A stretch of 64,000 nt of DNA, from positions 1 to 64,000 of IMG/VR virus record IMGVR_UViG_3300009034_000001, one strand, 5' to 3'. The notes below the pieces were generated by a model, which worked only from the letters and a program-made list of their open reading frames with translations, ran no database searches and was not told where the DNA came from. The position numbers and the translations under genes were made by a program. Below, piece by piece: positions 6,583 to 47,700 of this stretch; positions within the stretch are counted from its first letter, which is position 1; each line of letters begins with the position of its first letter.

Positions 6583-7317
6583 CTATTTAGACTTTTTTTT
6601 CAAAAACATTTCCAGAGCAGCTTGTTTAATACATTTGGTATATCTCGACCACATACCTTCTTTCTTACAATAACTTCGTACTTTCTTGATGTTGTCATCC
6701 TTTACTAAATGATGCTCACATCCTATGCACTTCTTAATAATCCTTTTGTGTCGCCTAAGACTGGATTCCTTGCACATATTAACAAAGTTTTTGAATATTA
6801 CCGAGCCGCATTTACTAAGTTCCGGATGAAACTGAACACCATATATGGGTAATGTTTCATGTTTTATGCCGGCAATTTGGCAACGATGTGTCTTGGCTAT
6901 AATCATGAAACGTTTAGGCTTCGTCAAAATACTATCTCTATGAAACATCCATACCACTTCGGTCTTATTCAGTTCTTTAAAGAGTGGAACGTGTACTATC
7001 ATGGATACATCAACATAGCCATACTCAGCCCTTATTCCAACATGGCTGTGATGCATAACTGCAACCAATTGAGCACCTAAACAAATACCCAATACCGGAA
7101 CATTTAATTTAAAAATTTTATGGTCAATCAAATGAGGTTGAACACTTGGAATATCACCAAGACTACCGGACAGGATGAGTCCTGCAACGTGATGTGTATT
7201 TGACAAAGGTGCAACTGGGTCAACAATCATAGGTTTTCCGCCTGCATGAAAAACTCGTTCTGCTACTAATTGTGCATAAACATTTGCAAAGTTTAAGACC
7301 AAAATATGTTTCTGCAT
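6583..7317 (-). CDS. GMP synthase-like class I glutamine amidotransferase subunit with Cys-rich C-terminal extension
   Basis: GICLGAQ nucleophile, AEYG, VWMFHRD and GVQFHPE (His-Glu); no ATP-PPase domain. Confidence 0.88.
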   Translation of the reverse strand: MQKHILVLNFANVYAQLVAERVFHAGGKPMIVDPVAPLSNTHHVAGLILSGSLGDIPSVQPHLIDHKIFKLNVPVLGICLGAQLVAVMHHSHVGIRAEYGYVDVSMIVHVPLFKELNKTEVVWMFHRDSILTKPKRFMIIAKTHRCQIAGIKHETLPIYGVQFHPELSKCGSVIFKNFVNMCKESSLRRHKRIIKKCIGCEHHLVKDDNIKKVRSYCKKEGMWSRYTKCIKQAALEMFLKKKSK

Positions 7318-7330
7318 ACTAGGCCACCAA

Positions 7331-8515
7331 TTAAGACCAATCCCAACACATTATATTTTGAGTAGTATGGTAGTCTTCCATATAATTTGGATCACTGCCT
7401 TTCCTAATAATTACATCACATGCTTGTTTATCTTCGGGTATTACAATCTCCCCTTCCTCTTTACCAAGTTTGTTCCTTTCCGCTTCGACATCTAAAACCA
7501 ACTTTTGAAACGAAAAGAAATTTGTGTTGTGTGTAGTACCAAAAGCGTGTCGCATCATATGGAATCCAACATGTCGCAAGAAAGCCCTACACTTTATTCC
7601 CTCTTCAAGTGATTCGGAATTTAAGTATGGCTGATGAGTACTACCTGCAGACTGCATAGCTGGAAGTTTGGTTACCTCCATATTTAGATGTGCCATCGCT
7701 GCATTCATCATTGCGTGCTGTATTGATCCAAACATCATATAATAATTCTTCGTGGGACAAGGAAAACCATAGTGAATACAAGTTACCTCCGGGCAGACCG
7801 TCTGAGCGACAACAATCATAAACAAGACTTCGGCATGGCAAAGAGTGAGAAGGCCCTCTGGCGTCTGCGGTGCGTTTGTCCCAGACATAGGCATAGTACT
7901 TAAACCCAGGTTAGCACCTAATCTTGCACTCCTAACAATGCCGCCCATCTTTTCTGGGATTTCAGTCAGCGGTGACTCAACGCCACAAAAGATATGAACC
8001 CAATCCGGACTAACAAATTGACTTACCTCTTTATCACCCATCTCTGCCATCGAAATACCTTTCAGGAAGTCATTTGGCAGGTTATCATGCATTATTCGAG
8101 CCATTCTATACAGGTTACCATTTGGCACTCCAATTGGGGTATGGCTAAATTTAATTACATCGGTATTATTAGCAATATAATCTACCGCCCATTTTAGATC
8201 TGTATAAGTCGCTGGACGAACTTCCTGATTTATAAAATAACCTTCTTCATGTATAGCAGGCTTCTCTTCAATCAATTGTAATCGACCACCAAGCCCAAAG
8301 GAGTTTCTGCCCGGATCAACTTTCAGTTTCTTTGGCGCTCGGTCTATACATTCCTGCGTATAATCTTTCAGTATATGGATGTGCCCCGTTTTCTCATCGT
8401 AGCCGGCCATACCAGTACCTTCTAAGATAGTTCTAATGTCCTTTGAGAACAGTTTGAAGCCTGCCTCTTCAAGGACTTTCTTTGCGTTACTGTGAATCCT
8501 TTCGTACGTTTGCAC
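7331..8515 (-). CDS. MttB (trimethylamine methyltransferase) superfamily protein, no pyrrolysine codon
   Basis: RIHSNAKKVLEEAG N-terminus, SPL, MPMSGTNAPQTPEGLLTLCHAEVL, FGS, FSFQKLVLD, YMEDYHT. No in-frame TAG. Confidence 0.82.
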   Translation of the reverse strand: MQTYERIHSNAKKVLEEAGFKLFSKDIRTILEGTGMAGYDEKTGHIHILKDYTQECIDRAPKKLKVDPGRNSFGLGGRLQLIEEKPAIHEEGYFINQEVRPATYTDLKWAVDYIANNTDVIKFSHTPIGVPNGNLYRMARIMHDNLPNDFLKGISMAEMGDKEVSQFVSPDWVHIFCGVESPLTEIPEKMGGIVRSARLGANLGLSTMPMSGTNAPQTPEGLLTLCHAEVLFMIVVAQTVCPEVTCIHYGFPCPTKNYYMMFGSIQHAMMNAAMAHLNMEVTKLPAMQSAGSTHQPYLNSESLEEGIKCRAFLRHVGFHMMRHAFGTTHNTNFFSFQKLVLDVEAERNKLGKEEGEIVIPEDKQACDVIIRKGSDPNYMEDYHTTQNIMCWDWS

Positions 8516-8655
8516 TTGGCTACTCCGCTAACGACTTACAAAGTGTTACGAACTCCTGTTTCGTCTTTACCTTCTTAACAACCTCTTCTAACCTGTCACC
8601 AACCCAAGCTTGTAGATAAGCCTTGTGTTTTACAAGTTCTTTTATTTGTTTTGTG

Positions 8656-9009
8656 TCACAATGCTTTTCCATCTTTTCCCTCCATAAAGTTTTTAATTTC
8701 TTTAGCAATAATGTTAGCCTCTTCGTATGCCTGTTCGCCTTTTGATCGGCTTTTCAAAAGAAACTTCACTGGTGACATAGCACAATCCGTCAACACAAGA
8801 ACATCCCAGGTGAACCCAACATGGCAGGCATCACAATAATAAAGTAAAATGGGTAGATTATTAAGAAGATGAACATCCGCCCGAAAATAAATCGTAAAAG
8901 GTTTTACCCCATGGCCACGACAACTATTTTCTGTCTTTAGACCCGGGATTTCATTTATAGCATCACACAACCGGATACATTCGTTTTCCATATTATCATC
9001 ATAATCCAT
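8656..9009 (-). CDS. SCxGH-motif protein (TYW3/Taw3 N-terminal-like), copy 1
   Basis: CIRLCDAINEIPGLKTENSCRGHG. Confidence 0.6.
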   Translation of the reverse strand: MDYDDNMENECIRLCDAINEIPGLKTENSCRGHGVKPFTIYFRADVHLLNNLPILLYYCDACHVGFTWDVLVLTDCAMSPVKFLLKSRSKGEQAYEEANIIAKEIKNFMEGKDGKAL

Positions 9010-9292
9010 ACAGAAAGAACCACCCCTGTCCTTTAACGGAGTTAATCATTTTATCAACTACCTTATCAACCTTTCTTGCAACCTTATAATCAGGACAAAT
9101 TATAAGCTCCCTCCCATCCTCAAGTACGATATTTCCAGGACGTTTCCCATGGCCACAGCATGAAGCAACCGTCTTAATGCCTTTCCGATTCAAAGCTAAT
9201 ACCAATTCCGAAATACATCGATCCACATTATATAGCTTGCCTGACGAACTTACTAATACAGTATCTCCCCATTTACACATTTCCGTAAACAC
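8999..9292 (-). CDS. SCxGH-motif protein, copy 2
   Basis: VDRCISELVLALNRKGIKTVASCCGHG. Confidence 0.65.
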   Translation of the reverse strand: MFTEMCKWGDTVLVSSSGKLYNVDRCISELVLALNRKGIKTVASCCGHGKRPGNIVLEDGRELIICPDYKVARKVDKVVDKMINSVKGQGWFFLYGL

Positions 9293-9319: not shown

Positions 9320-10081
9320 CTATATCTTGCTCAGAATCTCAACGCCGTTTTCTGTTATAGCAACACAATGCTCAAAATGAGCTGACAAATTGCTATCTTT
9401 GGTCACCACCGTCCAGCCATCGGAAAGTATCTCTACCTCGCTCGTGCCAACATTTGCCATGGGTTCAATAGCCAAAATCATTCCATACCTCAAACGTGGT
9501 CCGTGTCCGGGCTTACCAAAGTTTGGAATCTCGGGTGCTTCATGAAGTGACTTACCGATACCGTGGCCCACAAATTTTCTCACTACTGAAAATCCTTTAG
9601 ACTCTATGTATTCCTGAATAGCAAATGATATGTCAGAAACTCTATTGTTATCTACAGCCTTTTCGATACCTAAGTAAAGCGCCTGTTCGGTTGCCTCTAT
9701 TAAAAGAGCAGTCTCTTTTGAAACTACACCCACCGGTACGGTAATAGCGGCATCTCCAAAATATCCATCGTACAATACGCCAAAGTCAAGACTAATAATA
9801 TCTCCATCTTTTAATATTCGTTTAGAAGGTATACCATGTACCACCTCTTCGTTAACCGAAGTGCATAAACTATGAGAGTATCCCATGTAACCTTTAAATG
9901 CAGGAAACGCACTCATCTCCATGCAAAGCCTCTCACAACGATCATTTAATTCTATTGTTGTAACACCGGGCTTTACTAAAGATTTAATTGCGTCCAGTAT
10001 CTCTGCAACAATAGCATTACTTTTCCTCACCCTCTCAATCTCCGAAGGAGATTTTAAGATAATCAGTTTCTTGGTATCCAT
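9320..10081 (-). CDS. map: Type I methionine aminopeptidase
   Basis: CTSVNEEVVHGIP, SLDFG, GDAA, GHGIG..LHE.P, AIEPM, SAHFEH; all metal ligands present. Confidence 0.97.
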   Translation of the reverse strand: MDTKKLIILKSPSEIERVRKSNAIVAEILDAIKSLVKPGVTTIELNDRCERLCMEMSAFPAFKGYMGYSHSLCTSVNEEVVHGIPSKRILKDGDIISLDFGVLYDGYFGDAAITVPVGVVSKETALLIEATEQALYLGIEKAVDNNRVSDISFAIQEYIESKGFSVVRKFVGHGIGKSLHEAPEIPNFGKPGHGPRLRYGMILAIEPMANVGTSEVEILSDGWTVVTKDSNLSAHFEHCVAITENGVEILSKI

Positions 10082-10484: not shown

Positions 10485-10970
10485 TCATTTTTGTTCTCCT
10501 TTAGAACAACTTTGTTCGATAATGCTAGTGGTGGAAGCTCCCTTTACATAATGTAAGCTTATAACCTCGCCGCCATGATTCTTAACAACGTCGGCTCCAA
10601 TAATGTTCTCCACTGACCAGTCGCCACCTTTCACCAGCACATGAGGTACAAGCGACTCAACCACTCTCAGGGGATCCAATTCATCAAAAATTACCACACT
10701 GTCAACACATTGAAGTGCAGCCAATACCTCTGCCCGCTCATCTTGAGGAACCAAGGGTCTTCCCTCGCCTTTTATGGCTCTTGCGGAGCTATCACTATTT
10801 ATGGCTACAATCAGATGATCACCACAGGTCTTAGCTTCTGCAAGATATCGAACATGGCCTACATGTAAAATATCAAAGCAGCCATTGGTAAGAACGACGT
10901 GCTTTCCCTCACCCTTGAGTTGGACAACTAAACGTTTCAACTCTTCTAAGCTTTTAATCTTCTTTCTCAT
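10485..10970 (-). CDS. rfaE2: D-glycero-beta-D-manno-heptose 1-phosphate adenylyltransferase (HldE C-terminal domain)
   Basis: TNGCFDILHVGH, NSDSS..KG.GRP, LVKGGDW, GASTT. Confidence 0.92.
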   Translation of the reverse strand: MRKKIKSLEELKRLVVQLKGEGKHVVLTNGCFDILHVGHVRYLAEAKTCGDHLIVAINSDSSARAIKGEGRPLVPQDERAEVLAALQCVDSVVIFDELDPLRVVESLVPHVLVKGGDWSVENIIGADVVKNHGGEVISLHYVKGASTTSIIEQSCSKGEQK

Positions 10971-16687: not shown

Positions 16688-16939
16688 TTAATCAATACAA
16701 ACAATACGACGACGTGATTCTTCAGCTTCCCTAACGCTTTCATTATGTTTATGATGTTCATACATCCGATTAGTATGATCTTTTTCTTCCTTAAGTAAGT
16801 GTTTAAGTGCGCTTATTCTCTGTTCAAGTTGTAAACATCGTTTATCTTTTTCTTCCTTAAGTAAGTGTTTAAGTTCTCTTATTCTCTGTTCAAGCTTTAA
16901 ACAACGTTTACAATTACTGTCTTTCATATCCATTACCAC
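16688..16939 (-). CDS. Coiled-coil protein with a 22-aa (66-bp) tandem duplication
   Basis: KRCLxLEQRIxxLKHLLKEEKD occurs twice. Confidence 0.7.
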   Translation of the reverse strand: MVMDMKDSNCKRCLKLEQRIRELKHLLKEEKDKRCLQLEQRISALKHLLKEEKDHTNRMYEHHKHNESVREAEESRRRIVCID

Positions 16940-18168
16940 CTTTCTAATAAGTAAGACTTTTCTTTCTCAAAGATTAAACATTCATCTTCAACAAACTCTT
17001 CCACCTGCTGAACTGACATACGACAAGTAGCATTAACGAAATGTAAGGTTTTTCCTAAGTACAACGGAATGAGCGAATTAGTAATATCTGTACGACTCAT
17101 TAAGTCTTTCTTGTAAGCAATGGCAAAATCAAACAATATTTTTGCCCACAAGGTTGTTGGGAAATTAAAACGCTTAAGAAGCCCCTTTATCTTTAATAAC
17201 TCATTATAATTGTTGGAATCAATCACCGTCGACCAAGTGTTCTCGAAATCGGCAAACCCTTGAACAAACTTCTTGAGTAAAATTTCCTTATCTACCTTCA
17301 CAACAGGGGGCCGTTCAATTTGGCCAAGTCCAAAACCAAAGATGGGCGTTGGCTTACTGGATTTAACCTGTTTCCAAACGTCCTCAAAGTGAGTCATTAA
17401 ATTAAAAAGCGTTCCTACCACCTCTTGGAACATAGCGCCTAAATGCAAGCCTGGATCCTTTGTATTATGAATCTTTGGTCTGCCTAAGAAAGTTTGACAA
17501 ACTTTTGCCCCTTTGTTAATAGCTAATGTGGTCATCCAAATATCAATTCCAAACTTTGAAACTCTTTCATTCCAACATCCCACCGAATGATCATCCAATC
17601 GGCACTCATTTACAAAGGCTTTAACAAGGTTCCCTGAGAAACCGAAGTCGCCAGCAATAGGTTGTCTGACTCTCATTCCATATAACATTCGAGTTAACGG
17701 ATAAGCAAGGTTATTTGTAATTGTGCCATCATACTTATGTCTAACATAAATTGGTATAACATAATCAAAACCGGAAAATAGTGGTCCACCTAAGTATTGT
17801 ATCCACCTGGGCATAATGCTCATTAGATCTGCATCAATCACAATTACAGCCTTAGCCTGTAACATATGTGCTTGAAAAAATAAGTTCTTCAGATTTATTC
17901 CTTTACCTTTAACCCCGGACTTTGTTGATAGATAAATCTTGGGGGTCTTTGTAGCTACTTTCAAGAACACGTCCTTAGTATTATCAAGCGAACAGTTATC
18001 ACAGTTAATAATAACAGCAGATTTGTCACCAAAGAATCTAACTAGGCCATCATCCACTCGTTTGGTTGGAAACCCTATTTTGTCAGCCTCATTAAATGAA
18101 GGTATGCCAACAACCAACTCAGCACATTCAATACCACTTGGATTTTCAATGTAATCCATATCATTCAT
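16933..18168 (-). CDS. GT-A glycosyltransferase, glucosylglycerate/mannosylglycerate synthase-like
   Basis: VVGIPSFNE, GKG, DAD, P.YVRHKYDGTITN, RQPIAGDF, FGIDIWMTT. Confidence 0.8.
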   Translation of the reverse strand: MNDMDYIENPSGIECAELVVGIPSFNEADKIGFPTKRVDDGLVRFFGDKSAVIINCDNCSLDNTKDVFLKVATKTPKIYLSTKSGVKGKGINLKNLFFQAHMLQAKAVIVIDADLMSIMPRWIQYLGGPLFSGFDYVIPIYVRHKYDGTITNNLAYPLTRMLYGMRVRQPIAGDFGFSGNLVKAFVNECRLDDHSVGCWNERVSKFGIDIWMTTLAINKGAKVCQTFLGRPKIHNTKDPGLHLGAMFQEVVGTLFNLMTHFEDVWKQVKSSKPTPIFGFGLGQIERPPVVKVDKEILLKKFVQGFADFENTWSTVIDSNNYNELLKIKGLLKRFNFPTTLWAKILFDFAIAYKKDLMSRTDITNSLIPLYLGKTLHFVNATCRMSVQQVEEFVEDECLIFEKEKSYLLERW

Positions 18169-18908: not shown

Positions 18909-19862
18909 TTAACCTACGGGTTTGAATCGTTGGTGCTCTAATGCTTCCTCTAATTCATTTTGAAACACAACAGACGTCATACCTTTCAATACCGCCAAAC
19001 TACCAGCCACAACTGCAATCTTAGTGGCATCACTTAAACTCTTTCCTGAGCCAATACTCAAAGCTAATGCAGCAACAACAACATCACCTGCGCCACAAAC
19101 GTTTGTAACCTCACTTGTAATAGATGGAAAATGTTTCGGATTGAAATTTGATTTCTCATGTAGATACAAACCATCCGCATTTGCCTTGACAATAACAGCA
19201 TCTAAACCCAACATTTCAATCAGAGCTTTCGGATTTGAAAACCCTTCAGAACAGGCAACAGTCAACTCTTTCCGATTCGGTGTCAACAAGTTAGCATTGG
19301 CATATTTGCTAAACTCAACTTTAGGGTCCACAATTACAAAATTGTTATTTCGTCTTGCACGCGTTGATGTATTAAAGCAGACATCTCTTGTGACTACGCC
19401 TTTGGCATAATCCGACACAACTACAATACCATCATTTATCATGTAATCCTCAACGCGTTGCAACATTTGTTCCTCTTCCGCTTCGGTCAGTACGCCGGGA
19501 CTCTCTTGATCAACACGGAGCAGTTGTTGCTGACGTGCTACAAATCTTAACTTACGGGTGGTCTTTCTGGTTGGACTGATAACACATCGGTCTACAATTT
19601 CACCATCATTTAGTAAACCTTTTAAAAGTTCTCCGTCGTCATCCGGACCCCTTAATCCAATCAGTTCAACTGACTCCGCACCAAGAGATATTAAATTTGC
19701 AGCAACATTTGCAGCTCCACCTAACATATAAAGTTGTGACTTTTCCCGGAAGACGGGCACCGGCGCTTCGGGAGAAATTCGATTCACTAATCCAAACGCC
19801 CAATGATCCAACATACAATCTCCAAGACACAACACTTTAATATTTTTCCTAAACAAACTCAT
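18909..19862 (-). CDS. rfaE1: D-glycero-D-manno-heptose 7-phosphate kinase (HldE N-terminal, PfkB family)
   Basis: GD.MLD, RISPEAPVPV, GGAANVA, QQLLRVD.E, SDYAKG, VDPK, TPN..E, GAGD. Confidence 0.92.
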   Translation of the reverse strand: MSLFRKNIKVLCLGDCMLDHWAFGLVNRISPEAPVPVFREKSQLYMLGGAANVAANLISLGAESVELIGLRGPDDDGELLKGLLNDGEIVDRCVISPTRKTTRKLRFVARQQQLLRVDQESPGVLTEAEEEQMLQRVEDYMINDGIVVVSDYAKGVVTRDVCFNTSTRARRNNNFVIVDPKVEFSKYANANLLTPNRKELTVACSEGFSNPKALIEMLGLDAVIVKANADGLYLHEKSNFNPKHFPSITSEVTNVCGAGDVVVAALALSIGSGKSLSDATKIAVVAGSLAVLKGMTSVVFQNELEEALEHQRFKPVG

Positions 19863-21165: not shown

Positions 21166-23454
21166 CTATGCTTCCATCAGTCTTGACAATTGATCAATCA
21201 ACATTTTAAGTGACGTCCTCAGAGGGTGTCCCTCTGGCAACATGTCAATTGTAACTTCGAAGTATTGTCTACTTAACCTTAAGTAATAAAAGCCCAGCTC
21301 TTTGGCGGGGGCGTAAAATTGAGACTCCAAGCCTAATGCTTTCTTTAATAACTTCTCCGCTTCCGGGTCAAGCGAATTTTGTTCAATTAAATGTACGGCC
21401 ATGGAAAACCAAGGACGTGGATCCTTGGGAGACTTTTCGGCCATTTTCTGATACATGGACCAATAGTGATCAAGTTTCTTCCCAACGTCCACCTTCGGCT
21501 TGAGATATCCAAAATGATCCACCACCGTTCTTGATCGATGCACATCCAAATTCAACTTATGCGCGCAGTAGTCAACTGTTTCATGAACGTGGCCAGTATA
21601 TTCCATCTTTTGTGGATTCCTCATGAGCCTAATTGTTTCCGAAAAGGATGGCTTACTTGCTTGAGGTATCCAATTGTGTACACTGAAACAGAAACAATCT
21701 ACGTGTGGATTATCCAATTGTCGATTCAATATTCTTAAATCGTGTATCCGTTCGTCGATATCAAGATGCTGAAACCATGGAGTTGAAACCTCCTTAAGAA
21801 TTTTATTACGACAAACGTCAAAGCCATCATCAATTGATCCAGTTAAAATCCTTACATTGTATAATTGTGCTAACTCGATGGAGCCATCTGTACTTCCCGT
21901 ATCTAACAGAATAACTTCGTCAAAGAAAGCAGACGCAATTTTTAAATATTCATCAAGGATGCCAACTTCATTTTTCATTACCGATCCAACAGTACATTGA
22001 GCATCTTCCGAGAAGTGTGAAATTTTAACATCTGTATCAATCAAGAACTTGTAATCTTTATCTCCCGCCAACATTGGATCAGGATTTGGATCGAGCTTTG
22101 TATAAAAGTCAAATTTCTTCCTCCTCATTTCCTCGGTCAAGTATCCAAAATGTTTAATTCTAATTGAACTTTGTGCATGATACTCAATAGGATAATAAGG
22201 CACATTTCCTACGTGTATCTTTGTATTCTTGTGACCTCGGTCCTTCCACCAATCAATTTTACATCCTTTATACACTTTACAAATACGAGGCATATCTGCA
22301 AAACCAAAGTGCTTATCGGTTCGATAGTTATTTTCATCATTCCACATTGTATAATACTGTAACCTTAAACAAAGCGTCTCCGGCGAAAGTTTCCTTAACA
22401 TCTGTTCAATATACATTCGGTCAACCTTATCCTCAGGAATTTCATCTGCATCTATCGACCATAACCAATTGCAACTATGCTGAATAGTAGCCAAATCAAC
22501 CAAATCCTGCCGTTGATCAAGTTCATCTTTCCTTTCCTTATCCTTATAGTAGATAATATTATCATATCTCCGGAGGACCAAGGTGATATCTAATGGAGAA
22601 TCATCATCCAAGATAAATATCCAATCTCCAATTTGTGACATCTTTTTAATCGATTTGTCAAACAACTTCAACTCATCTTGGTCTTCAATCCTGACGCGGT
22701 ACATAACACCTAATACTAAAGGTTCTTCTTTAACCTTCTGTCTCCAACGTTTTAAAAACGGAATTCTTGAACTACCACCAATCATATCCCACTGTGGTGG
22801 CAATGCCACACCGCGCCTAAACACATATCCATCGGAACATACGTAGGAATGGAAACCAGCAAGGTATAAACGTAAAATGAAATCCACATCCTCAACACCT
22901 TCATAAAGTTCTTCAACGAAACCGTTAACAGCATCAAAAGCTGACTTCTTAACAAACATACAAAAACTGGTTAAGTAACCCACTTCCCAAAAACGAGGAA
23001 AGCCCTTTGAATGTAGCTTGTCCTGAACCGATTGCACATTATCTGCAGTTGCACCTCTCAAATCAAGTCGTTGCTGACCAGGTACGTTGTTGCACAACGG
23101 TCCTATTGCTCCAACGGGAGCACGTAGCTGCAAACCGACGTCTTCAATAGCCATTTCCAATTGTTCAACAATGCCGCTAGGAAGTACAATATCATCAGCA
23201 AGAAACAAAATGTATTCGCCTTGTGCCTCTTTCGCACCGGCATTACAAGCTCCAGCCCTATTAAGGTTGGTTGCTTTTATAACCTTACCATCCGGAAGTG
23301 TGCTTACAAGTGTTTCAATAACCTTAACATTGTCAGGAGTACAATCAGCACAAACTACAATAACCTCCGCGGATGTAGACTTTAAACTCTCCAAACACTG
23401 AGTTAAGTGTGAAACGTTGTTACATGTTGGAACTACAATCGACGTTTGATTCAT
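21166..23454 (-). CDS. Multidomain glycosyltransferase (three GT2-like domains plus TPR-like C-terminus)
   Basis: SIVVPT...LADD...EDVDF; LDD.S...IDADE...HFGY; KNE...DTGSTDGS...LDIDE...VHE...HFGY; helical tail. Confidence 0.85.
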   Translation of the reverse strand: MNQTSIVVPTCNNVSHLTQCLESLKSTSAEVIVVCADCTPDNVKVIETLVSTLPDGKVIKATNLNRAGACNAGAKEAQGEYILFLADDIVLPSGIVEQLEMAIEDVGLQLRAPVGAIGPLCNNVPGQQRLDLRGATADNVQSVQDKLHSKGFPRFWEVGYLTSFCMFVKKSAFDAVNGFVEELYEGVEDVDFILRLYLAGFHSYVCSDGYVFRRGVALPPQWDMIGGSSRIPFLKRWRQKVKEEPLVLGVMYRVRIEDQDELKLFDKSIKKMSQIGDWIFILDDDSPLDITLVLRRYDNIIYYKDKERKDELDQRQDLVDLATIQHSCNWLWSIDADEIPEDKVDRMYIEQMLRKLSPETLCLRLQYYTMWNDENNYRTDKHFGFADMPRICKVYKGCKIDWWKDRGHKNTKIHVGNVPYYPIEYHAQSSIRIKHFGYLTEEMRRKKFDFYTKLDPNPDPMLAGDKDYKFLIDTDVKISHFSEDAQCTVGSVMKNEVGILDEYLKIASAFFDEVILLDTGSTDGSIELAQLYNVRILTGSIDDGFDVCRNKILKEVSTPWFQHLDIDERIHDLRILNRQLDNPHVDCFCFSVHNWIPQASKPSFSETIRLMRNPQKMEYTGHVHETVDYCAHKLNLDVHRSRTVVDHFGYLKPKVDVGKKLDHYWSMYQKMAEKSPKDPRPWFSMAVHLIEQNSLDPEAEKLLKKALGLESQFYAPAKELGFYYLRLSRQYFEVTIDMLPEGHPLRTSLKMLIDQLSRLMEA

Positions 23455-41744: not shown

Positions 41745-44700
41745 TTAAATCATTCTACGTACTAACTTCTTTCCAATATTGTTAGCAACGATTTCACCGT
41801 ATTTTTTTGATCCGAAATATTGATCAAGTTGTTGTTCATCAAAAATATTCACAACAGTTAACTTTGGAGGTTCAACTCCTCTACCTGGCACTATCCCACC
41901 TTCTTGGAAGAATTGGCCTAATGGCGATAGCTGCGTTGATACAGATTGTAGATTTGATACATAACCACCAAGTTGTCTTGAGATGAATTCAGATACAGGC
42001 ATTAAGCCCTGATTAAGGGAACTTAGAAACGCTAAGCCATACTTTCTTACCGCCCGAGACTGTAATACATACTCGCCTTCATGTAATATTGCAGGTACTT
42101 CGCCACCTCTTTGGAAACCTTTTGCACCTGTGAGGCCTTTAAATAATCCCCCAAAGACACCGCCAACCAAATTCTGAAGTAACTGAAGTATGGATCCTAA
42201 GCCTCCGCCCGCGGTTCCACCAAGTGTACCTAAAATGTTGCCAAAGAAACCTTTTTGTGCACCTTTTGGTTCGCCAATAATGCCCTTAAACAATGAACCA
42301 AACAACGTTTCCATGCCACGTAATGGGAACCCAAGCCCCTTACCAAACAAGCCTGCTCCACCACCTAACAAAGTTGGCAAGAGCGACACAAGTCCACCAA
42401 GTTGAAACCTTGATACATATCCACCTTTAGCGCCTCCAAATAAGCCTTTTAACCCACCAGCTATTTGTTCAAATCCACCTTTCATGAAGCTACCTAACTG
42501 CTGTATTCCGCCAAATGCTTTTGTTATAAGTCCATATAAGAAATTAAATGGTCCCATCATTGACGACCATTGTTTCTGTCTCAACCCAAGTGTTGCAGCC
42601 TCTTTAAATTCTTCGGGTGCCTTCTGCCATACCGGAGGAGCTTGTTCACCTCCAGAGGTAGTTCCCGTTCCAAACATGCCGCCAACACCTTTAAGTAATC
42701 CCATTGCTGGTCCAACAAATTTCAAAGCGGTCAATACGCCGCCTATCCAGAAACTAGGAGAGCCAATTGTCTTGAAAAGATGTACTAACTGTGACGAGCC
42801 TGTTTTTGCAATTAAGCCGCCGTGTTCAAGTCCACCAATTGCTTGTAAGAAGGCTGTAGGCGCACCACCAAGGCCGCCACCACCTTTTCCGCCGCCTAAC
42901 ATTGCACCGAGTCCCCAACCTTTTAAACCGCCTCCAAGTTTTCCAGCCCAATCTAATAACTTACCCCACCACATAGGTGTAAAACCTTTCTTTGCAAACA
43001 ACACTCCACCAAGTTTTTCTAATAAACCTTCTGGACCAAGTGCACCTCCCGCGAAGAGTGGCAAAAGTGCGCCCAATACGGGTCCACCAAGTTGATACTT
43101 TCTGACTGAACCGCCTACTTGATGCCGTAATGGAACCAAGCCCGAATTTAGCGAATCAAAGAACGACTTACCATACTTACTAACGGCCTGTTTCTTCATA
43201 ACAAATTCGCCTGCATGTACAATTGCTGGTACCGCACCACCTTTTTGGAAACCAAATAAACCTTTGACCGCACCAAACAATCCCCCTAATTTGCCTAATC
43301 CGCCTAATATTTTACCGCCCAACCATTGTGAAGACAGCCAAGTTTCCCGACCTAACCATTTGAACCCGCCGGTAATTTCACCGGGTATTCTTTGTAAAAA
43401 ACCTAACGTTCTTGACCAAAGTCCAGGTCCCGCAGCCCCAACGGGTGCCACACCAGGAGCCACACCAGGAGCCACACCAGGAACACCGGTCACAACACCA
43501 GAGACGCCGGGACGGTACCCAGCAGCAGCAAGCTTCTTTGCAATATTAAGTTTAATATAATCAAGAGTTAGGCCTTGAACTTGCTTCCTTTCCTCTTTCA
43601 CCGTTGCAACAGTATCTTTCATGAAGTCAAGACCCAGGGCTTCTAATGCCTTTGTAACAGCCCAACGCGTTGCAATGGTAACCAATGCCTTTACAAATTC
43701 AAATTTGAAGCGTTTTATAATATCACGCCATCTTAATTCAAAGTTTTCACCATACACGATCCACCTAGCAACCGCATCTCCTACTTCTGAGGTTAGATCA
43801 TTCCACACTTGTGATATCAGTTCACCAGCTTTAACTGCAAAGTCTTGAACTGCTGCCCAAGCGCCACGGGAATAATCAACCATCCAATCAGATGACGTCT
43901 TGACTTTCGCCATTAAGATATCCCAGAAACTGTGCTGTGACTTCATGCCCGCTTCAGCTTCTTTAACAATGTTTTCCCACATTTCCTTCTGGACTGAAAC
44001 AACCGCTTCAGAGTAAGCACGATGATATTGTTGCGACGTTCTACTAAGTTTCAGTTCGTGAACCAAATAGTCATCAATTTGTTTCATCCGAGCTTGGAAA
44101 TACTCTTTGTTATACTTTCCACTTAACCTTAATCTTTCAACTTCCTCTTCAAGCATCTTCTTCCAAGATTCTCGTAATCTTACATAAACGGCTTCGCCTA
44201 ATTTCACAAGTCCTTCTACTTCTTCCGCGTGTTCTCTTACTTTTTCATTAGTACTTGCAAGATCTGCTTGATGTGCCCTCAGCCAAACGCCCGCTGCTTC
44301 TAACGAGCCCATTAAATCGTCCTCAGAACCTACAAATCCAATATTTGCTTCCGTCAATGCAGCAACAACTTTCCTTGCGCGTTCTTGAGCGTTTCCATAA
44401 ACTAAAGTTGCTTCGCCAACGTCCACCAACCTTTTATCAACTTCCAGCAATGTTTCCTCGAGCGCAAACTGTTTCTCCAACCACTCTAATGTAGACAGAC
44501 CCGTGTCTTTTAAAGTCTTGTTATAGTTCCGTGTTTCTGTTGTCACGATTACAAGTCGGTTGATTAATTCTGTAAGTACCTTTTGCTGGGCTTCTGTAAG
44601 TTTGTTCCAATCGATATGAGTTTGAATTAACTCTTTTATTCTTTCCGGCGTGGTTTTAATGGAAATGTTTAAATCATCAATTATCGTCCTCAACGTTGAG

Positions 44701-47700
44701 TCTGACTTCCTCATTTTGTCTATCCATTCAGTTGCATGCTCCTGCGCTGCAACTAAATCCTTAAGTTTATCATCTTCGTCCTTAAGGGCTTTAACCACTT
44801 CAATTTTCCAGTCAACCAATTCCATATGTTTCGAAATCAATTCATCTAAACCTTTTATATTCTTATCCTGAGAAGCAGTGTAGTTGTCCAAACTGCTACT
44901 TAATAAATCGATCCAGAATAGCAGTTTTGCAGCAACTTCACCGCCTGTTTCCCTTGCCACATTGAGTTTGTCTTGTAACTGAACTTGAGTCATACTTTTT
45001 ACTTCAAGTTCTGGATATAACTGATGAACTACAAATCGAAGTACTCTCAAATACCCTTCCAATGCAGACTTTTGTCTCTTCTTAGCTTCAACATCCTTAT
45101 CTCCAGCTGCCAAAAGTTTGTCAAAGAACGACGCTTCCTTATCTTGAATGGCTATCACGGCCTTTGACAGGTTAATTCTTTTGGTATTTGCATCGGTAAA
45201 GGCTTTCACATCTGCGTCGGTTGCTGCAACTTTTTCATCAATCAACTCGGTATACAAATCGGTGGATCTCTGTTCCCAATAGTCACGAGCCTTAATCATT
45301 TCTTCTAACGTGGCCGTTCCCATTGCATATCTTAATTCAAACCTTTCCATATCAGACAACAGACCTTCAAATGTGTCCCCCGTTCTCTTTGCCATCTTTT
45401 CGGCTGCGTCGCCAACATCTCCCGTCCCAGTTTTCACTATATTTTTAATCCGTGACCAAGAGTCCTTATGAATTGCATGAATGTCAACCAATGTATCAGC
45501 AACGCTATCGGCAAATTCCTCATATCGTTTTGCGGTCTCCTTATGAGCTTCGCCAATTATTGGAAGCAAACCAATCAACTCGTGATACATTTGCATAAGT
45601 TTTGCCATTCCCCACGAAACCAAAGCAATAGCGCCAGCAAACGCGGTCAAAGCAATGATTGTTGCTTCAATAGCAACGTTTAAAACCCCGACTAATACAA
45701 GACCCGCAGTTCCAAAGGCCCGTGAAAGTAAACTTACAAGGTTTGCGTGTTCTTTTAGCCAATTGTTGACAACAGCCAAAACACGTGAAAATACATTAAA
45801 ACGTTGTTCCAACTTGGATACTGCTTCTACAAGGAGGTAAATTAAAATTAGAGGCCAAACTCGTTGTAGGACGAGAAATGCAGTACGTAACGCTCTGGTA
45901 GCACCAGCTAAGGTAAACAACGACCCGGCAGCCATAACAGCAGACACAGCCATTCGACCTAGCCACATTCCAAAGCCCTTAAGCGCGGCGATTGTAGTTG
46001 CCAATATTGCACGCAATATAACCAATGACTCAACAACTAAAACTTTCAAAAACCGTCCAAGTATAACAACAGCTCCGCCAGTGCCTCGAGCCGTCTTTCC
46101 AAGTTTGAACAACAAGAGGTACAAAGGAAACGATACTTTCGACACCCACTGCATAGTCCGAGCCAAATACTTGTATACACCAGATAAGTGAGCGGTAGAG
46201 GCCAATGAAAGTACCATGGCCTTGTTTAATGCAGTAAGTAATATTGTAAGACCCTGAATTGAAATCCGGACTGAAATTACCGTTGCGGCCAATACCAATA
46301 ACTTCCCTATCCATGTAAGCGTCAAACCAGTTATAAATACCATAACGCCAGCTAATGCTGTCACCTGTTGACCTAAGAATAATGTCGCCTGTGCTTTTGT
46401 ATATAACAGTTTAATAACAGGTTCTAAACCCCGCTTTATATACTCACCCAGTTGTTTTTGGTAAACGAATGTTAAAACTTGAATTCGCCGTAGCGTACCA
46501 CCATAGGAATCCATAAATTTATTTACTTGTTCAACACGAGGTCCCAACACTTCAAATGTAGAACTAAGTCTTGCCATTGTTAACGCTTGTCGTTGCTGAA
46601 TAGGGTTCATTTCGTCGGTTACTTTTAACAGGCCTTTTGATTCAAGAGCGTCCTTTCTTACTTCAATACCATAACGTCTTGCTGCACGAACGTTACCGGA
46701 AATTGCGGCCTCTAACGATTGTGCTACCTCAGTCACAGAACGACCTTCTGCAGCAAACGATAAAATTCCTTCCACAAATTCCATAACTTGTTCTTCAGCA
46801 ACGCCCATAACGCCCAAGAAGTCAACAATAGGACTAATAGCATGAATTACTGTAGGTGGTAAAATTCCAAATTGAACAGATAACTCATCCACAGCCTTCG
46901 TCCACTGTGCTGTAGTCCAAATAGCTTTTGCGTTAACTGTTCTATAAACCTCAATTGCTGCAACTAATAAATATGCGGATCTTTCCATTTCGACAGAAGC
47001 ATGAACCCACCTGCCCGCAGCCTGGACCAAACCTATTCCAATGGCTTCAATTAATCTACCAACACCAGCAAATAACCGTGCCCAAACAAGTTCAACAAGG
47101 ATTGCAGACGTTGTAACTCTTCTCAGTGCTGGAACCATTCCTCTGTTAAGCGCTTGTGATGCTTGTCCCGTAGCTGCAGTAAATCCTTTCAAACCCGTTG
47201 ACACTTTTGCCGTTGCAGAACCAGCACCTGCCATTGCTCTTCCAACTCTACCGCTAACTCCAGCAAGGTCTTGCATTACGGCAGAACCTGTGATTGTAGC
47301 CCGGCGTAAACCTTTAATGCCAACGCCAAATCTATCTAGTATGCCACCGGCATGGTAGAGGCCACGTGAAAGCATTGAAAAGACGCCAACACCGCCCGAT
47401 ACCGTTCCAAAGAACCTGGCAAAGCCACGTGAAATACTAGCGGTACTGGTCAGTACCAAACCAAAGACTTTTGCAAGTTTTAAACCTGTTTCGCCAAGTG
47501 TGCCCGTTCCCAACATTAAATCGCGAACCATTAGTTTTGCTGTTGCCATGACGGGGGCCAGCTTTGCAACAACAGCTGTATATGTCGCAGTATTCCTAAT
47601 AGCAGATGCAATTCCGACGCCCACACCGGCAAAGGCAATTCCTACGGCTTTAACAATACCTATGGTGTTCATCCAAACAGCATTAAGAGCACTTGAAGAC

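What the first reader, a model, noticed from the sequence alone, without database searches (positions are those of the whole stretch)
7331..8515. Phage-encoded MttB-superfamily methyltransferase
Established: MttB proteins transfer methyl groups from methylamines or quaternary amines to corrinoid proteins in anaerobes. Seen: a compact 394-aa homolog without an amber codon, flanked by phage ORFs, with no corrinoid partner in the window. Inference: an unusual auxiliary metabolic gene for anaerobic C1/osmolyte metabolism, or a repurposed enzyme.
Basis: partly seen in the sequence, partly recalled or inferred. Interest (0 to 1): 0.65.

Follow-up and report, generated by a model that had tools for sequence, protein, structure and literature searches.

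The report
Phage-borne compact MttB-family methyltransferase
A complete 241-kb sediment phage that probably infects anaerobic Desulfobacterota carries one intact, short-form relative of the B12-dependent methylamine/quaternary-amine methyltransferases (MttB family) but none of that system's partner proteins, so it most likely uses the host's machinery to strip methyl groups from an osmolyte-like amine during infection; no such viral gene turned up in the literature searches.

Summary
Window 7331-8515(-) is an intact 394-aa ORF with no internal stop. It matches Pfam MTTB (72.9 bits, cut-off 25). Its AlphaFold model (pLDDT 91.7) superposes on MttB and MtgB (Z 37-38) with a complete TIM barrel. 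It lies inside a genuine, circularly closing 241-kb phage genome, and an independent contig carries the identical sequence. The phage encodes no corrinoid protein, MT2, pterin-binding methyltransferase, kinase or folate enzyme.

The protein is not a truncated canonical MttB. It belongs to an uncharacterised compact subfamily (about 395-430 aa) found mainly in Desulfobacterota. This subfamily has Ser at the pyrrolysine position and lacks MtgB's glycine-betaine-binding residues. It also lacks most of the C-terminal loop and helices that in MttB build the dimer and dock the corrinoid protein. In cells its genes sit beside an APH-type kinase, DAO-GCV_T demethylases and ETF, not beside corrinoid genes. 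This resembles the phosphocholine (MthK/MthB) system.

The phage copy is fully adapted to phage codon usage and keeps all 40 invariant subfamily residues. A recently captured map gene points to a Syntrophaceae-like host.

Best reading (about 0.5): an auxiliary metabolic gene that performs the first demethylation of a quaternary amine using host partners. Substrate, acceptor and expression are untested. Novelty: new variant of a known kind. Interest: moderate.

The parts
7331..8515 (-). mttB-like gene: 394-aa compact MttB-superfamily protein. It has an N-terminal subdomain, a complete (beta/alpha)8 barrel and a short 40-aa C-terminal tail.
   Evidence: The ORF is shown. Pfam MTTB scores 72.9 bits. 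The AF2 model has pLDDT 91.7 and pTM 0.92. VIA-align gives Z 37.9 to MttB 7xcl, with model 1-354 matching MttB 23-396. All 40 invariant subfamily columns are kept.
8523..8526 (-). Shine-Dalgarno-like GGAG, 7 nt upstream of the GTG start at 8513-8515. An in-frame TAG at 8528-8530 bounds the frame.
   Evidence: Read directly from the sequence.
8230..8265 (-). Codons for residues about 85-96 (PAIHEEGYFINQ). This is a phage-specific loop insertion at the place where MtgB carries its Y97 substrate-binding loop. It contains Y93 and F94 and is modelled with low confidence.
   Evidence: Alignment A1. Profile alignment to 9yce, which places MtgB Y97 in an insertion at the same point. pLDDT is 64-72 for residues 81-100.
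6583..7317 (-). Downstream neighbour, starting 13 nt after the mttB-like stop codon: a stand-alone class-I glutamine amidotransferase that resembles the N-terminal domain of GuaA.
   Evidence: Pfam GATase 91.6 bits. PHROG matches. TIGR00888 guaA_Nterm scores 138 bits, below its cut-off of 172.
8520..8708 (-). Small 62-aa ORF that ends 5 nt before the mttB-like start. It has no family match and may be translationally coupled.
9320..10081 (-). Type I methionyl aminopeptidase. This is a host-derived gene that marks the probable host lineage (Syntrophaceae-like Desulfobacterota).
   Evidence: TIGR00500 321 bits. It is 81-83% identical to MAP proteins encoded in chromosomal secY-adk-map-infA clusters. 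Its codon-usage distance to the phage is 0.124, against a phage mean of 0.077.

Best explanation
The gene is an auxiliary metabolic gene of a jumbo phage of anaerobic Desulfobacterota. It encodes the substrate-activating (MT1-type) component of an N-methyl demethylation system. Its TIM barrel would bind a quaternary or tertiary ammonium compound, probably a choline-type or otherwise anionic osmolyte-like amine rather than glycine betaine or trimethylamine. It would pass one methyl group to a Co(I) corrinoid supplied by the host. Host enzymes would then move the methyl group to tetrahydrofolate for energy or biosynthesis. Shown here: family membership, fold, intactness, viral location, absence of phage-encoded partners, and adaptation to the phage genome. 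Inferred: catalysis, the corrinoid acceptor, the substrate class, and the benefit to the phage.
For: Family and fold: Pfam MTTB 72.9 bits. The subfamily profile matches MtgB at E 4e-26 and MttB at E 1e-18. The model has pLDDT 91.7 and superposes on MttB, MtgB and 4yyc at Z 34-38 over 336-340 residues. Constraint: the phage protein keeps all 40 invariant columns and 81 of 100 columns that are at least 90% conserved, similar to its clade peers at 0.80-0.86. Long residence in the phage: its codon-usage distance is 0.078, equal to the phage mean of 0.077, whereas cellular homologues score 0.27-0.33. Genuine viral location: the genome ends overlap by 43 bp, and an independent IMG/VR contig is 100% identical over 15.3 kb. 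Identical pieces occur in two sediment runs, and a piece of the gene about 93% identical occurs in a marine run. Phage hallmark genes lie on both sides. Host: the phage MAP is 81-83% identical to chromosomal MAP of Syntrophaceae-type MAGs. Desulfobacterota genomes hold 10-23 B12-binding proteins and up to 32 MTTB paralogues, so partners would be available in such a host. Precedent for unlinked, shared corrinoid partners: R. pomeroyi MtgB versus MtgC/MtgD (PMC12478193). Substrate logic: cellular kin lie beside DAO-GCV_T (35 of 54 loci), an APH kinase (30), ETF (26) and FeS-CCG (21). Flavin amine oxidases cannot attack a quaternary nitrogen, so a methyltransferase is needed for the first step (established chemistry). 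The APH + EamA + MTTB triad mirrors the mthK/mthB/EamA cluster for phosphocholine (PMC12155760).
Against: There are no expression data, because no RNA run holds the sequence. The phage encodes no corrinoid protein, MT2, pterin-binding methyltransferase, kinase, ThyA, ThyX, DHFR or CobT, so the benefit is conjectural. The compact subfamily lacks most of the C-terminal loop and helices that form the primary MttC docking surface in MttB. In cells it is never near a corrinoid gene: 0 of 3 contiguous genomes, with the nearest 44-235 kb away, whereas 12 of 42 canonical paralogues have one within 5 kb. The phage protein belongs to a minor clade whose known contexts lack the APH/DAO cassette, so the substrate inference carries over only weakly. 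The gene is known from one phage lineage only.
Confidence: 0.5

Rival explanations
1. Repurposed, corrinoid-protein-independent enzyme. The compact subfamily, including the phage copy, has lost the corrinoid-protein docking element. It would work with a different acceptor (free cobamide, or directly a folate or thiol) or perform different chemistry on a small cationic metabolite. A single gene would then suffice for the phage.
For: The C-terminal dimerisation and docking region shrinks from about 100 aa to about 40 aa. Cellular members have no linked corrinoid gene, whereas canonical paralogues in the same genomes often do. The phage carries only this one gene of any such system. A clade mate is fused into a giant multi-enzyme ORF. 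The substrate-site residues of MtgB are replaced.
Against: No corrinoid-independent member of the MttB superfamily is documented in the papers read. The barrel and the conserved core positions are retained. Unlinked corrinoid partners are a known arrangement. MtgB itself methylates free cob(I)alamin in vitro (PMC13080624), so a missing docking loop does not show that the enzyme is independent of corrinoids.
Confidence: 0.22
2. Host-takeover role through osmolyte or cofactor manipulation rather than C1 supply. The enzyme would deplete or alter a compatible solute or choline-type pool, or tie up host corrinoid proteins, to change host physiology such as turgor, lysis timing, or shutdown of competing methylotrophy.
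For: The phage encodes no folate or C1 consumer. The gene sits among host-derived 'takeover or metabolic' genes: MAP, GATase, cytidylyltransferase, PfkB kinase and glycosyltransferases. The habitat is sediment or marine, where N-methylated osmolytes are abundant (general knowledge).
Against: The idea is purely inferential. The same data fit the AMG reading. No precedent was found in the literature searches.
Confidence: 0.13
3. Functionless passenger: a gene captured from a cell and not (or no longer) used by the phage.
For: It is found in one phage lineage only, and 19 distantly related viral records lack it. Its partners are absent. No transcripts are available.
Against: The frame is intact and has a good ribosome-binding site. 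All invariant residues are kept. The fold prediction is confident. Codon usage is fully adapted to the phage, which implies long residence without decay. A strain about 93% identical still carries at least part of the gene.
Confidence: 0.1
4. Assembly chimera or host contamination: the gene is bacterial DNA mis-joined to a phage contig.
For: It lies only 7-8 kb from the contig end. IMG/VR labels the record 'linear'.
Against: The contig ends overlap by 43 bp, which indicates circular closure. A second contig from another sample is 100% identical over 15,271 bp spanning the gene. The phage NAD-ligase lies on the far side of the gene. Strand, GC and codon usage match the phage, while cellular homologues have GC3 of 0.69-0.75.
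Confidence: 0.02

Closest known systems
MtgB, glycine betaine:corrinoid methyltransferase of Desulfitobacterium hafniense (PDB 2QNE/9YCE)
   Same: It is the best solved-structure match by sequence (profile E 4e-26) and ties for best by fold (Z 36.5, rmsd 2.4 A over 336 residues). Both are non-pyrrolysine proteins with the same N-terminal subdomain and TIM barrel. H348 is conserved as H323 in the phage protein.
   Different: Sequence identity is only about 18-20%. Among the glycine-betaine-binding residues, R312 becomes Met287 and F356 becomes Thr331. The Y97 loop is replaced by an unrelated insertion. About 65 C-terminal residues are missing. There is no adjacent mtgC or mtgA.
MttB, pyrrolysine-containing trimethylamine methyltransferase of Methanosarcina barkeri (PDB 7XCL/7XCN)
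   Same: It gives the top structural match (Z 37.9, with model 1-354 matching MttB 23-396). The barrel architecture is the same.
   Different: Pyl334 aligns with Ser292, which is invariant in the subfamily. The phage gene has no amber codon. It lacks MttB residues 2-22, most of the dimerisation loop 396-452 and both anchor helices 453-494. These elements build the dimer and provide the primary MttC contact (PMC9842639).
MthB/MthK phosphocholine demethylation system of Eubacterium limosum (PMC12155760)
   Same: Cellular main-clade relatives of the phage protein lie next to an APH-fold small-molecule kinase (30 of 54 loci). In some genomes an EamA transporter is also present. This is the same triad as mthK/mthB/EamA. 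The paper itself reports MthK-MthB co-localisation in 'delta-proteobacteria' and marine sediments.
   Different: Orthology to MthB could not be tested because its sequence was not retrievable here. The Desulfobacterota cassettes have no adjacent mthC or mthA. They carry DAO-GCV_T, ETF and FeS-CCG genes instead. The phage has no kinase, and its own minor clade lacks this context.
MtgBCD of Ruegeria pomeroyi: MttB-family MT1 with an unlinked, shared corrinoid protein (PMC12478193)
   Same: In both cases the MT1 gene is encoded far from the corrinoid and pterin-binding components and relies on shared partners. This matches what the phage enzyme would have to do.
   Different: The R. pomeroyi system belongs to an aerobic alphaproteobacterium and acts on glycine betaine. 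No sequence comparison was made here.

Membership tests
MttB superfamily (Pfam PF06253) | Significant match to the family profile above the curated cut-off | tested here: met
   72.9 bits against a cut-off of 25, E 1.7e-20. The six-frame genome scan gives 55.7 plus 18.3 bits.
MttB superfamily (Pfam PF06253) | N-terminal subdomain plus a complete (beta/alpha)8 TIM barrel | tested here: met
   AF2 model with pLDDT 91.7. Model 1-354 superposes on MttB 23-396, which includes the barrel at 82-395, with Z 37.9 and rmsd 2.5 A over 340 residues.
MttB superfamily (Pfam PF06253) | C-terminal dimerisation loop and two anchoring helices (MttB 396-495) that build the dimer and dock the corrinoid protein | tested here: not met
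   Only 40 residues follow the barrel, against about 100 in MttB, MtgB and 4yyc. HMMER alignments end at MtgB 409 of 477 and at about MttB 418-434 of 495. This is a trait of the whole subfamily.
MttB superfamily (Pfam PF06253) | Methyl transfer from an N-methyl substrate to a Co(I) corrinoid | not testable with these tools
   This needs an anaerobic enzyme assay. The docking prediction with a Desulfobacterota corrinoid protein gave no answer.
MttB superfamily (Pfam PF06253) | A cognate corrinoid protein, MT2 and activase available (typically encoded nearby) | tested here: not met
   No PF02310, PF01208 or PF00809 anywhere in the 241-kb phage genome. Cellular kin of the subfamily also lack a nearby corrinoid gene. 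The host could supply the partners in trans.
MttB proper (trimethylamine methyltransferase, TIGR02369) | Pyrrolysine encoded by an in-frame UAG at the active site, and an equivalog-level score | tested here: not met
   There is no internal stop. Pyl334 aligns with Ser292. TIGR02369 scores 65.7 bits against a cut-off of 525.
MtgB (glycine betaine methyltransferase) | Substrate-binding residues Y97, R312, H348 and F356 (PMC13080624) | tested here: not met
   R312 aligns with M287, F356 with T331, and H348 with H323 (kept). The Y97 loop is not conserved. These are alignment-based mappings at about 20% identity.
MthB (phosphocholine methyltransferase) | Co-localisation with an MthK-type kinase and with mthC/mthA; orthology to WP_341455952.1 | tested here: inconclusive
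   An APH kinase lies beside main-clade cellular homologues in 30 of 54 loci. However, there is no kinase in the phage or in the minor-clade contexts seen.
Phage auxiliary metabolic gene | A metabolic gene of cellular type located inside a bona fide viral genome with viral genes on both sides | tested here: met
   Phage ligase, tail, head-protease and exonuclease genes flank it. CheckV completeness is 98%. The genome ends overlap by 43 bp and an independent contig is identical.
Phage auxiliary metabolic gene | Expressed during infection and altering host metabolism | not testable with these tools
   No RNA run holds the sequence.

The most novel reading that the evidence does not exclude
The compact subfamily would be a self-sufficient quaternary-amine demethylase that no longer needs a dedicated corrinoid protein, using free cobamide or a different methyl acceptor. 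That would explain why a phage can carry this single gene alone, why its cellular relatives pair with a kinase and THF-dependent DAO-GCV_T demethylases instead of MtxC/MtxA, and why one relative is fused into a giant multi-enzyme protein. If so, this is the first viral enzyme that rewires host N-methyl osmolyte or choline metabolism, and it marks a new mechanistic branch of the MttB superfamily.
Probability: 0.15. Interest if true: 0.8.

Novelty: new variant of a known kind. Interest (0 to 1): 0.55.

Why it matters
MttB-family enzymes control the anaerobic fate of choline, betaines and methylamines. These compounds are major osmolytes and precursors of methane and trimethylamine.

A virus-borne copy would mean that phages of sulfate-reducing or syntrophic Desulfobacterota take part directly in methylated-amine turnover in sediments. 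This kind of auxiliary metabolic gene did not appear in any literature search made here.

The work also exposes an uncharacterised compact MttB subfamily, present in at least 54 species-level genomes. It has a distinctive gene cassette (kinase, DAO-GCV_T, ETF, FeS oxidoreductase) and no linked corrinoid protein. This suggests a complete, still undescribed anaerobic route for stepwise N-demethylation. The small phage protein would be a convenient entry point for biochemical and structural study of that route.

Tried and rejected
- **PHROGs:** no family matched the protein.
- **Promoter and terminator scan:** results around the gene were not above chance.
- **Small partner ORF:** the 97-aa ORF next to the bacterial homologues has no counterpart among the phage's small upstream ORFs.
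- **MthB paper supplements:** the tables were not held as text, and the MthB sequence could not be fetched. No tree against MthB, MtcB, MtpB or MtyB could therefore be built. Placement relative to characterised enzymes rests on PDB profile scores only.
- **IMG/VR scans:** scans with canonical-MTTB alignments failed (A2 had no usable pattern) or found nothing (A3). These scans depend on patterns and are not exhaustive.
- **Synteny in related phages:** probing with the GATase and the 249-aa ORF found no relative that shares the neighbourhood.
- **Docking prediction:** phage protein against a Desulfobacterota corrinoid protein gave no answer, which is neither support nor evidence against.
- **Reads:** only short contigs were available, too little variation for dN/dS.
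- **Large representative-protein search:** not used, because the family assignment was already settled, as the operators advised.
- **'Giant ORF' in L023:** considered as a possible artefact of masked Ns or another genetic code and rejected. It has no Ns and 0 stops in 8,952 nt, against 47-223 stops in the other frames.
- **GenBank record MT835866.1:** this record ('UNVERIFIED Bacteriophage sp.', from a faecal sample; microbial, not human DNA) carries a canonical-length MTTB homologue. It is an unannotated, high-GC 16-kb contig, so it was not accepted as a viral precedent.
Full report
**1. The observation**

Window 7331-8515 (minus strand) is an uninterrupted ORF of 394 codons that starts at a GTG. 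A GGAG lies 7 nt upstream of the start. An in-frame TAG four codons further up closes the frame, so the short N-terminus is real.

The protein matches Pfam MTTB (PF06253) at 72.9 bits against a cut-off of 25, with E 1.7e-20. A six-frame scan of the genome gives the same result. The pyrrolysine-MttB equivalog model TIGR02369 scores only 65.7 bits against a cut-off of 525. No PHROG family matches.

**2. It is truly phage-encoded**

- The window is the first 64 kb of a 241,415-bp IMG/VR virus record rated 98% complete.
- The record's first 43 bases repeat at its end, which indicates circular closure.
- A second IMG/VR contig of 173 kb, from another sample, is 100% identical over 15,271 bp spanning the gene.
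- Phage genes lie on both sides. An NAD-dependent DNA ligase is at 2-1498 (528 bits to a PHROG family). Tail proteins, a head-maturation protease and an exonuclease lie further on.
- 144 of 146 long ORFs share the gene's strand.
- The gene's GC (0.419), GC3 (0.38) and codon-usage distance to the phage (0.078) equal the phage averages (0.40; 0.355 +/- 0.041; 0.077 +/- 0.021). Cellular homologues have GC3 of 0.69-0.75 and distances of 0.27-0.33.
- Identical short contigs covering parts of the gene occur in two sediment metagenomes. A piece about 93% identical (7385-7532) occurs in a marine metagenome.

A chimera or contamination is therefore very unlikely.

**3. The probable host**

The neighbouring type I methionyl aminopeptidase (9320-10081; TIGR00500 at 321 bits) is 81-83% identical to MAP proteins encoded in canonical chromosomal secY-adk-map-infA ribosomal clusters. 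One source labels these as a Syntrophaceae bacterium. The next tiers of hits are all Desulfobacterota. The MAP gene's codon usage is less adapted to the phage (distance 0.124), which fits a recent capture. The host is therefore probably a strictly anaerobic Desulfobacterota. This is an inference.

**4. What kind of MttB protein it is**

A word-based search found 481 relatives. The best are 44-45% identical and lie on short contigs. The bulk are 37-39% identical, about 420-430 aa long, and come from Desulfobacterota MAGs. A scan of GTDB species genomes found 54 loci. Nearly all are Desulfobacterales, Desulfobulbales, Desulfarculia or Syntrophobacteraceae, with single Sumerlaeota, Myxococcota, Gammaproteobacteria and Anaerolineae MAGs. 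The ESM Atlas lists the same compact clusters of 404-424 aa, mostly Thermodesulfobacteriota.

The phage protein keeps all 40 invariant columns of a 21-member alignment. It also keeps 81 of 100 columns that are at least 90% conserved, similar to its clade peers at 0.80-0.86.

In a maximum-likelihood tree it sits in a well-supported minor clade (SH-aLRT 99). Its clade mates are P0002/3/5, P0007 and the Sumerlaeota sequence. This clade is sister to the main Desulfobacterota clade, not nested inside it.

**5. Structure**

AlphaFold2 run with the subfamily alignment gives pLDDT 91.7 and pTM 0.92. Foldseek and VIA-align both put MttB, MtgB and the S. meliloti homologue far above all other structures:

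| Target | PDB | Z | rmsd | Residues aligned |
|---|---|---|---|---|
| MttB | 7XCL | 37.9 | 2.5 A | 340 |
| MtgB | 2QNE/9YCE | 36.5 | 2.3-2.4 A | 336 |
| S. meliloti homologue | 4YYC | 34.4 | 2.6 A | 336 |
| MtmB | | 21.6 | | |
| MtgA | | 14.4 | | |

Model residues 1-354 cover MttB 23-396. This is the N-terminal subdomain plus the entire TIM barrel (82-395 according to PMC9842639).

What is missing is the C-terminus. Only 40 residues follow the barrel, against about 100 in the canonical proteins. In MttB that region is the dimerisation loop (396-452) plus two anchoring helices (453-494). The loop of the partner subunit provides the primary contacts with the corrinoid protein MttC. This loss is a trait of the whole subfamily.

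**6. Active-site positions**

All mappings are alignment-based at about 20% identity.

| Reference position | Phage residue | Note |
|---|---|---|
| MttB Pyl334 | Ser292 | invariant in the subfamily |
| MtgB R312 | Met287 | Val in the main clade |
| MtgB F356 | Thr331 | Leu in the main clade |
| MtgB H348 | His323 | conserved |
| MtgB Y97 | not conserved | lies in an 8-residue loop absent from the subfamily |

The four MtgB positions are its experimentally verified glycine-betaine-binding residues (PMC13080624). The phage has its own 12-residue insertion at exactly the point of the Y97 loop. This insertion (residues about 85-96) contains Tyr93 and Phe94 and is modelled with low confidence. The protein is thus neither an MttB proper nor an MtgB.

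**7. Genomic context in cells**

Across the 54 loci the recurrent neighbours are:

- a fused DAO-GCV_T protein, like dimethylglycine or sarcosine dehydrogenase (35 loci);
- an APH-fold kinase (30 loci);
- ETF alpha and beta (26 loci);
- an FeS-CCG oxidoreductase (21 loci);
- GntR, ABC or EamA transporters and a HAD phosphatase in subsets.

No corrinoid gene is nearby. In three contiguous genomes the nearest B12-binding gene is 44-235 kb away. By contrast, 12 of 42 canonical MTTB paralogues in the same genomes have one within 5 kb, and several of those paralogues carry an in-frame TAG.

The kinase + EamA + MTTB triad recalls the E. limosum mthK/mthB/EamA/mthC/mthA cluster. There, choline is phosphorylated and phosphocholine is the MttB-family substrate. 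The authors report MthK-MthB co-localisation in 'delta-proteobacteria' and marine sediments (PMC12155760).

Flavin amine oxidases cannot oxidise a quaternary nitrogen. The cassette logic therefore suggests that the compact MTTB removes the first methyl group and DAO-GCV_T enzymes remove the next ones. This is an inference. Unlinked, shared corrinoid partners are known for R. pomeroyi MtgB (PMC12478193).

**8. What the phage lacks**

The complete phage genome has no match for any of the following:

- B12-binding domain
- URO-D/MT2
- pterin-binding methyltransferase
- APH kinase
- ThyA or ThyX
- DHFR
- CobT
- NrdD

A tblastn search with all cassette proteins finds only the mttB-like gene itself.

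The immediate neighbours are:

- a stand-alone GATase resembling the GuaA N-terminal domain, 13 nt downstream;
- small unknown ORFs;
- MAP;
- a cytidylyltransferase;
- a PfkB kinase;
- glycosyltransferases;
- RNase HII.

This is a block of host-like metabolic genes, but none is related to C1 metabolism.

**9. Rarity in viruses**

- tblastn of the phage protein against 50,697 GenBank phage records found nothing.
- A canonical MTTB query found one UNVERIFIED, unannotated, high-GC 16-kb contig.
- IMG/VR pattern scans found only the sister contig.
- 0 of 19 distantly related viral records carry PF06253, including a complete 182-kb one.
- Literature searches gave no report of a virus-encoded MttB-family gene.

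The pattern scans and the held literature are not exhaustive.

**10. Interpretation**

The best-supported reading (about 0.5) is an auxiliary metabolic gene for the first, methyltransferase step in demethylating a quaternary or tertiary amine, working with host corrinoid and folate partners. The substrate is probably a choline-type or other anionic osmolyte-like amine.

The main rival (about 0.2) is that the compact subfamily no longer depends on a dedicated corrinoid protein or has a new acceptor. This would neatly explain a lone viral gene.

Osmolyte or cofactor manipulation (about 0.13), a functionless passenger (about 0.1) and a chimera (about 0.02) follow.

A docking prediction with a Desulfobacterota corrinoid protein gave no answer and counts neither way. 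No RNA data exist. Section 3 of the task is therefore answered by inference from homology, architecture and context, not by direct evidence of activity.

**11. Verdict**

This is a real, intact, phage-adapted member of an uncharacterised compact branch of the MttB superfamily: a new variant of a known kind. It is moderately surprising for phage ecology and for the biochemistry of quaternary-amine demethylation. Its value depends on assays that cannot be run here.

Noticed in passing
L023:3-8954 (SLGR01000084.1, Candidatus Sumerlaeota MAG): One frame is open over the whole 8,954-bp contig: at least 2,984 aa with 0 stops and no Ns, while the other frames have 47-223 stops. It contains Glu/Leu/Phe/Val dehydrogenase domains (aa 110-593), an MTTB-like domain of the phage protein's own minor clade (aa 625-999), FBPase_glpX (aa 2376-2523) and PPDK_N (aa 2783-2984). 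This looks like a giant multi-enzyme fusion protein.
   Followed up: partly
L003, L004, L005, L010, L011 and 54 GTDB loci L012-L065: The compact MTTB genes of Desulfobacterota form a recurrent cassette with DAO-GCV_T (sometimes two copies), an APH-fold kinase, ETF alpha/beta and an FeS-CCG oxidoreductase. Some also have GntR, HAD, EamA or ABC transporter genes. No corrinoid gene is present. This may be an undescribed anaerobic pathway for complete N-demethylation of a choline-type compound.
   Followed up: partly
window 9320-10081 (-): The phage-encoded type I methionyl aminopeptidase is 81-83% identical to chromosomal MAP of Syntrophaceae-type MAGs. Sediment contigs of 10.6 kb match it at about 87% nucleotide identity. 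This indicates a recent host-to-phage capture and serves as a marker of the host lineage.
   Followed up: yes
window 8656-9009 (-) and 8999-9292 (-): Two adjacent small ORFs (117 and 97 aa), just upstream of the mttB-like gene, share a Cys-x-Gly-His-Gly-x-(Lys/Arg)-Pro motif and look like paralogues. They have no Pfam match and only a weak PHROG match of unknown function.
   Followed up: no
G000:C1 1-43 and 241372-241414: The first 43 bases of the record repeat at its end, so the genome probably closes into a circle, although IMG/VR classes it as linear. The ligase gene that runs off the window start would continue across this junction.
   Followed up: partly
whole phage genome (G000): 144 of 146 ORFs of at least 150 aa lie on the minus strand, and GC skew is uniformly negative across the window. 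This is an almost completely unidirectional 241-kb genome.
   Followed up: no
window 41745-48197 (-): A 2,150-aa ORF lies among the tail-region genes. It was not analysed.
   Followed up: no
window 6583-7317 (-): This stand-alone class-I glutamine amidotransferase is most like the N-terminal domain of GMP synthase (TIGR00888 at 138 bits, below its cut-off). No synthetase domain was seen next to it, so its acceptor enzyme is unknown.
   Followed up: partly
window 10485-10970, 16933-18168, 18909-19862, 21166-23454 (all -): A cytidylyltransferase-like gene (its PHROG match is to heptose-phosphate adenylyltransferase), a PfkB sugar kinase and two glycosyltransferase-like genes lie in this stretch. 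Together they suggest phage-encoded sugar-nucleotide or glycosylation chemistry, acting either on DNA or on the cell surface.
   Followed up: no
G004 (genome of L057), for example C2:955363-974403: This Desulfobacterales MAG carries 32 MTTB paralogues, and at least 10 of them have a single in-frame TAG. This is consistent with pyrrolysine use in marine Desulfobacterota.
   Followed up: no
L084 (MT835866.1): This GenBank record, 'UNVERIFIED: Bacteriophage sp.', is a 16-kb contig from a faecal sample. It encodes a canonical-length MTTB homologue that is 27% identical to a Desulfobacterota paralogue. The contig is high-GC and unannotated, and its viral nature is doubtful.
   Followed up: partly
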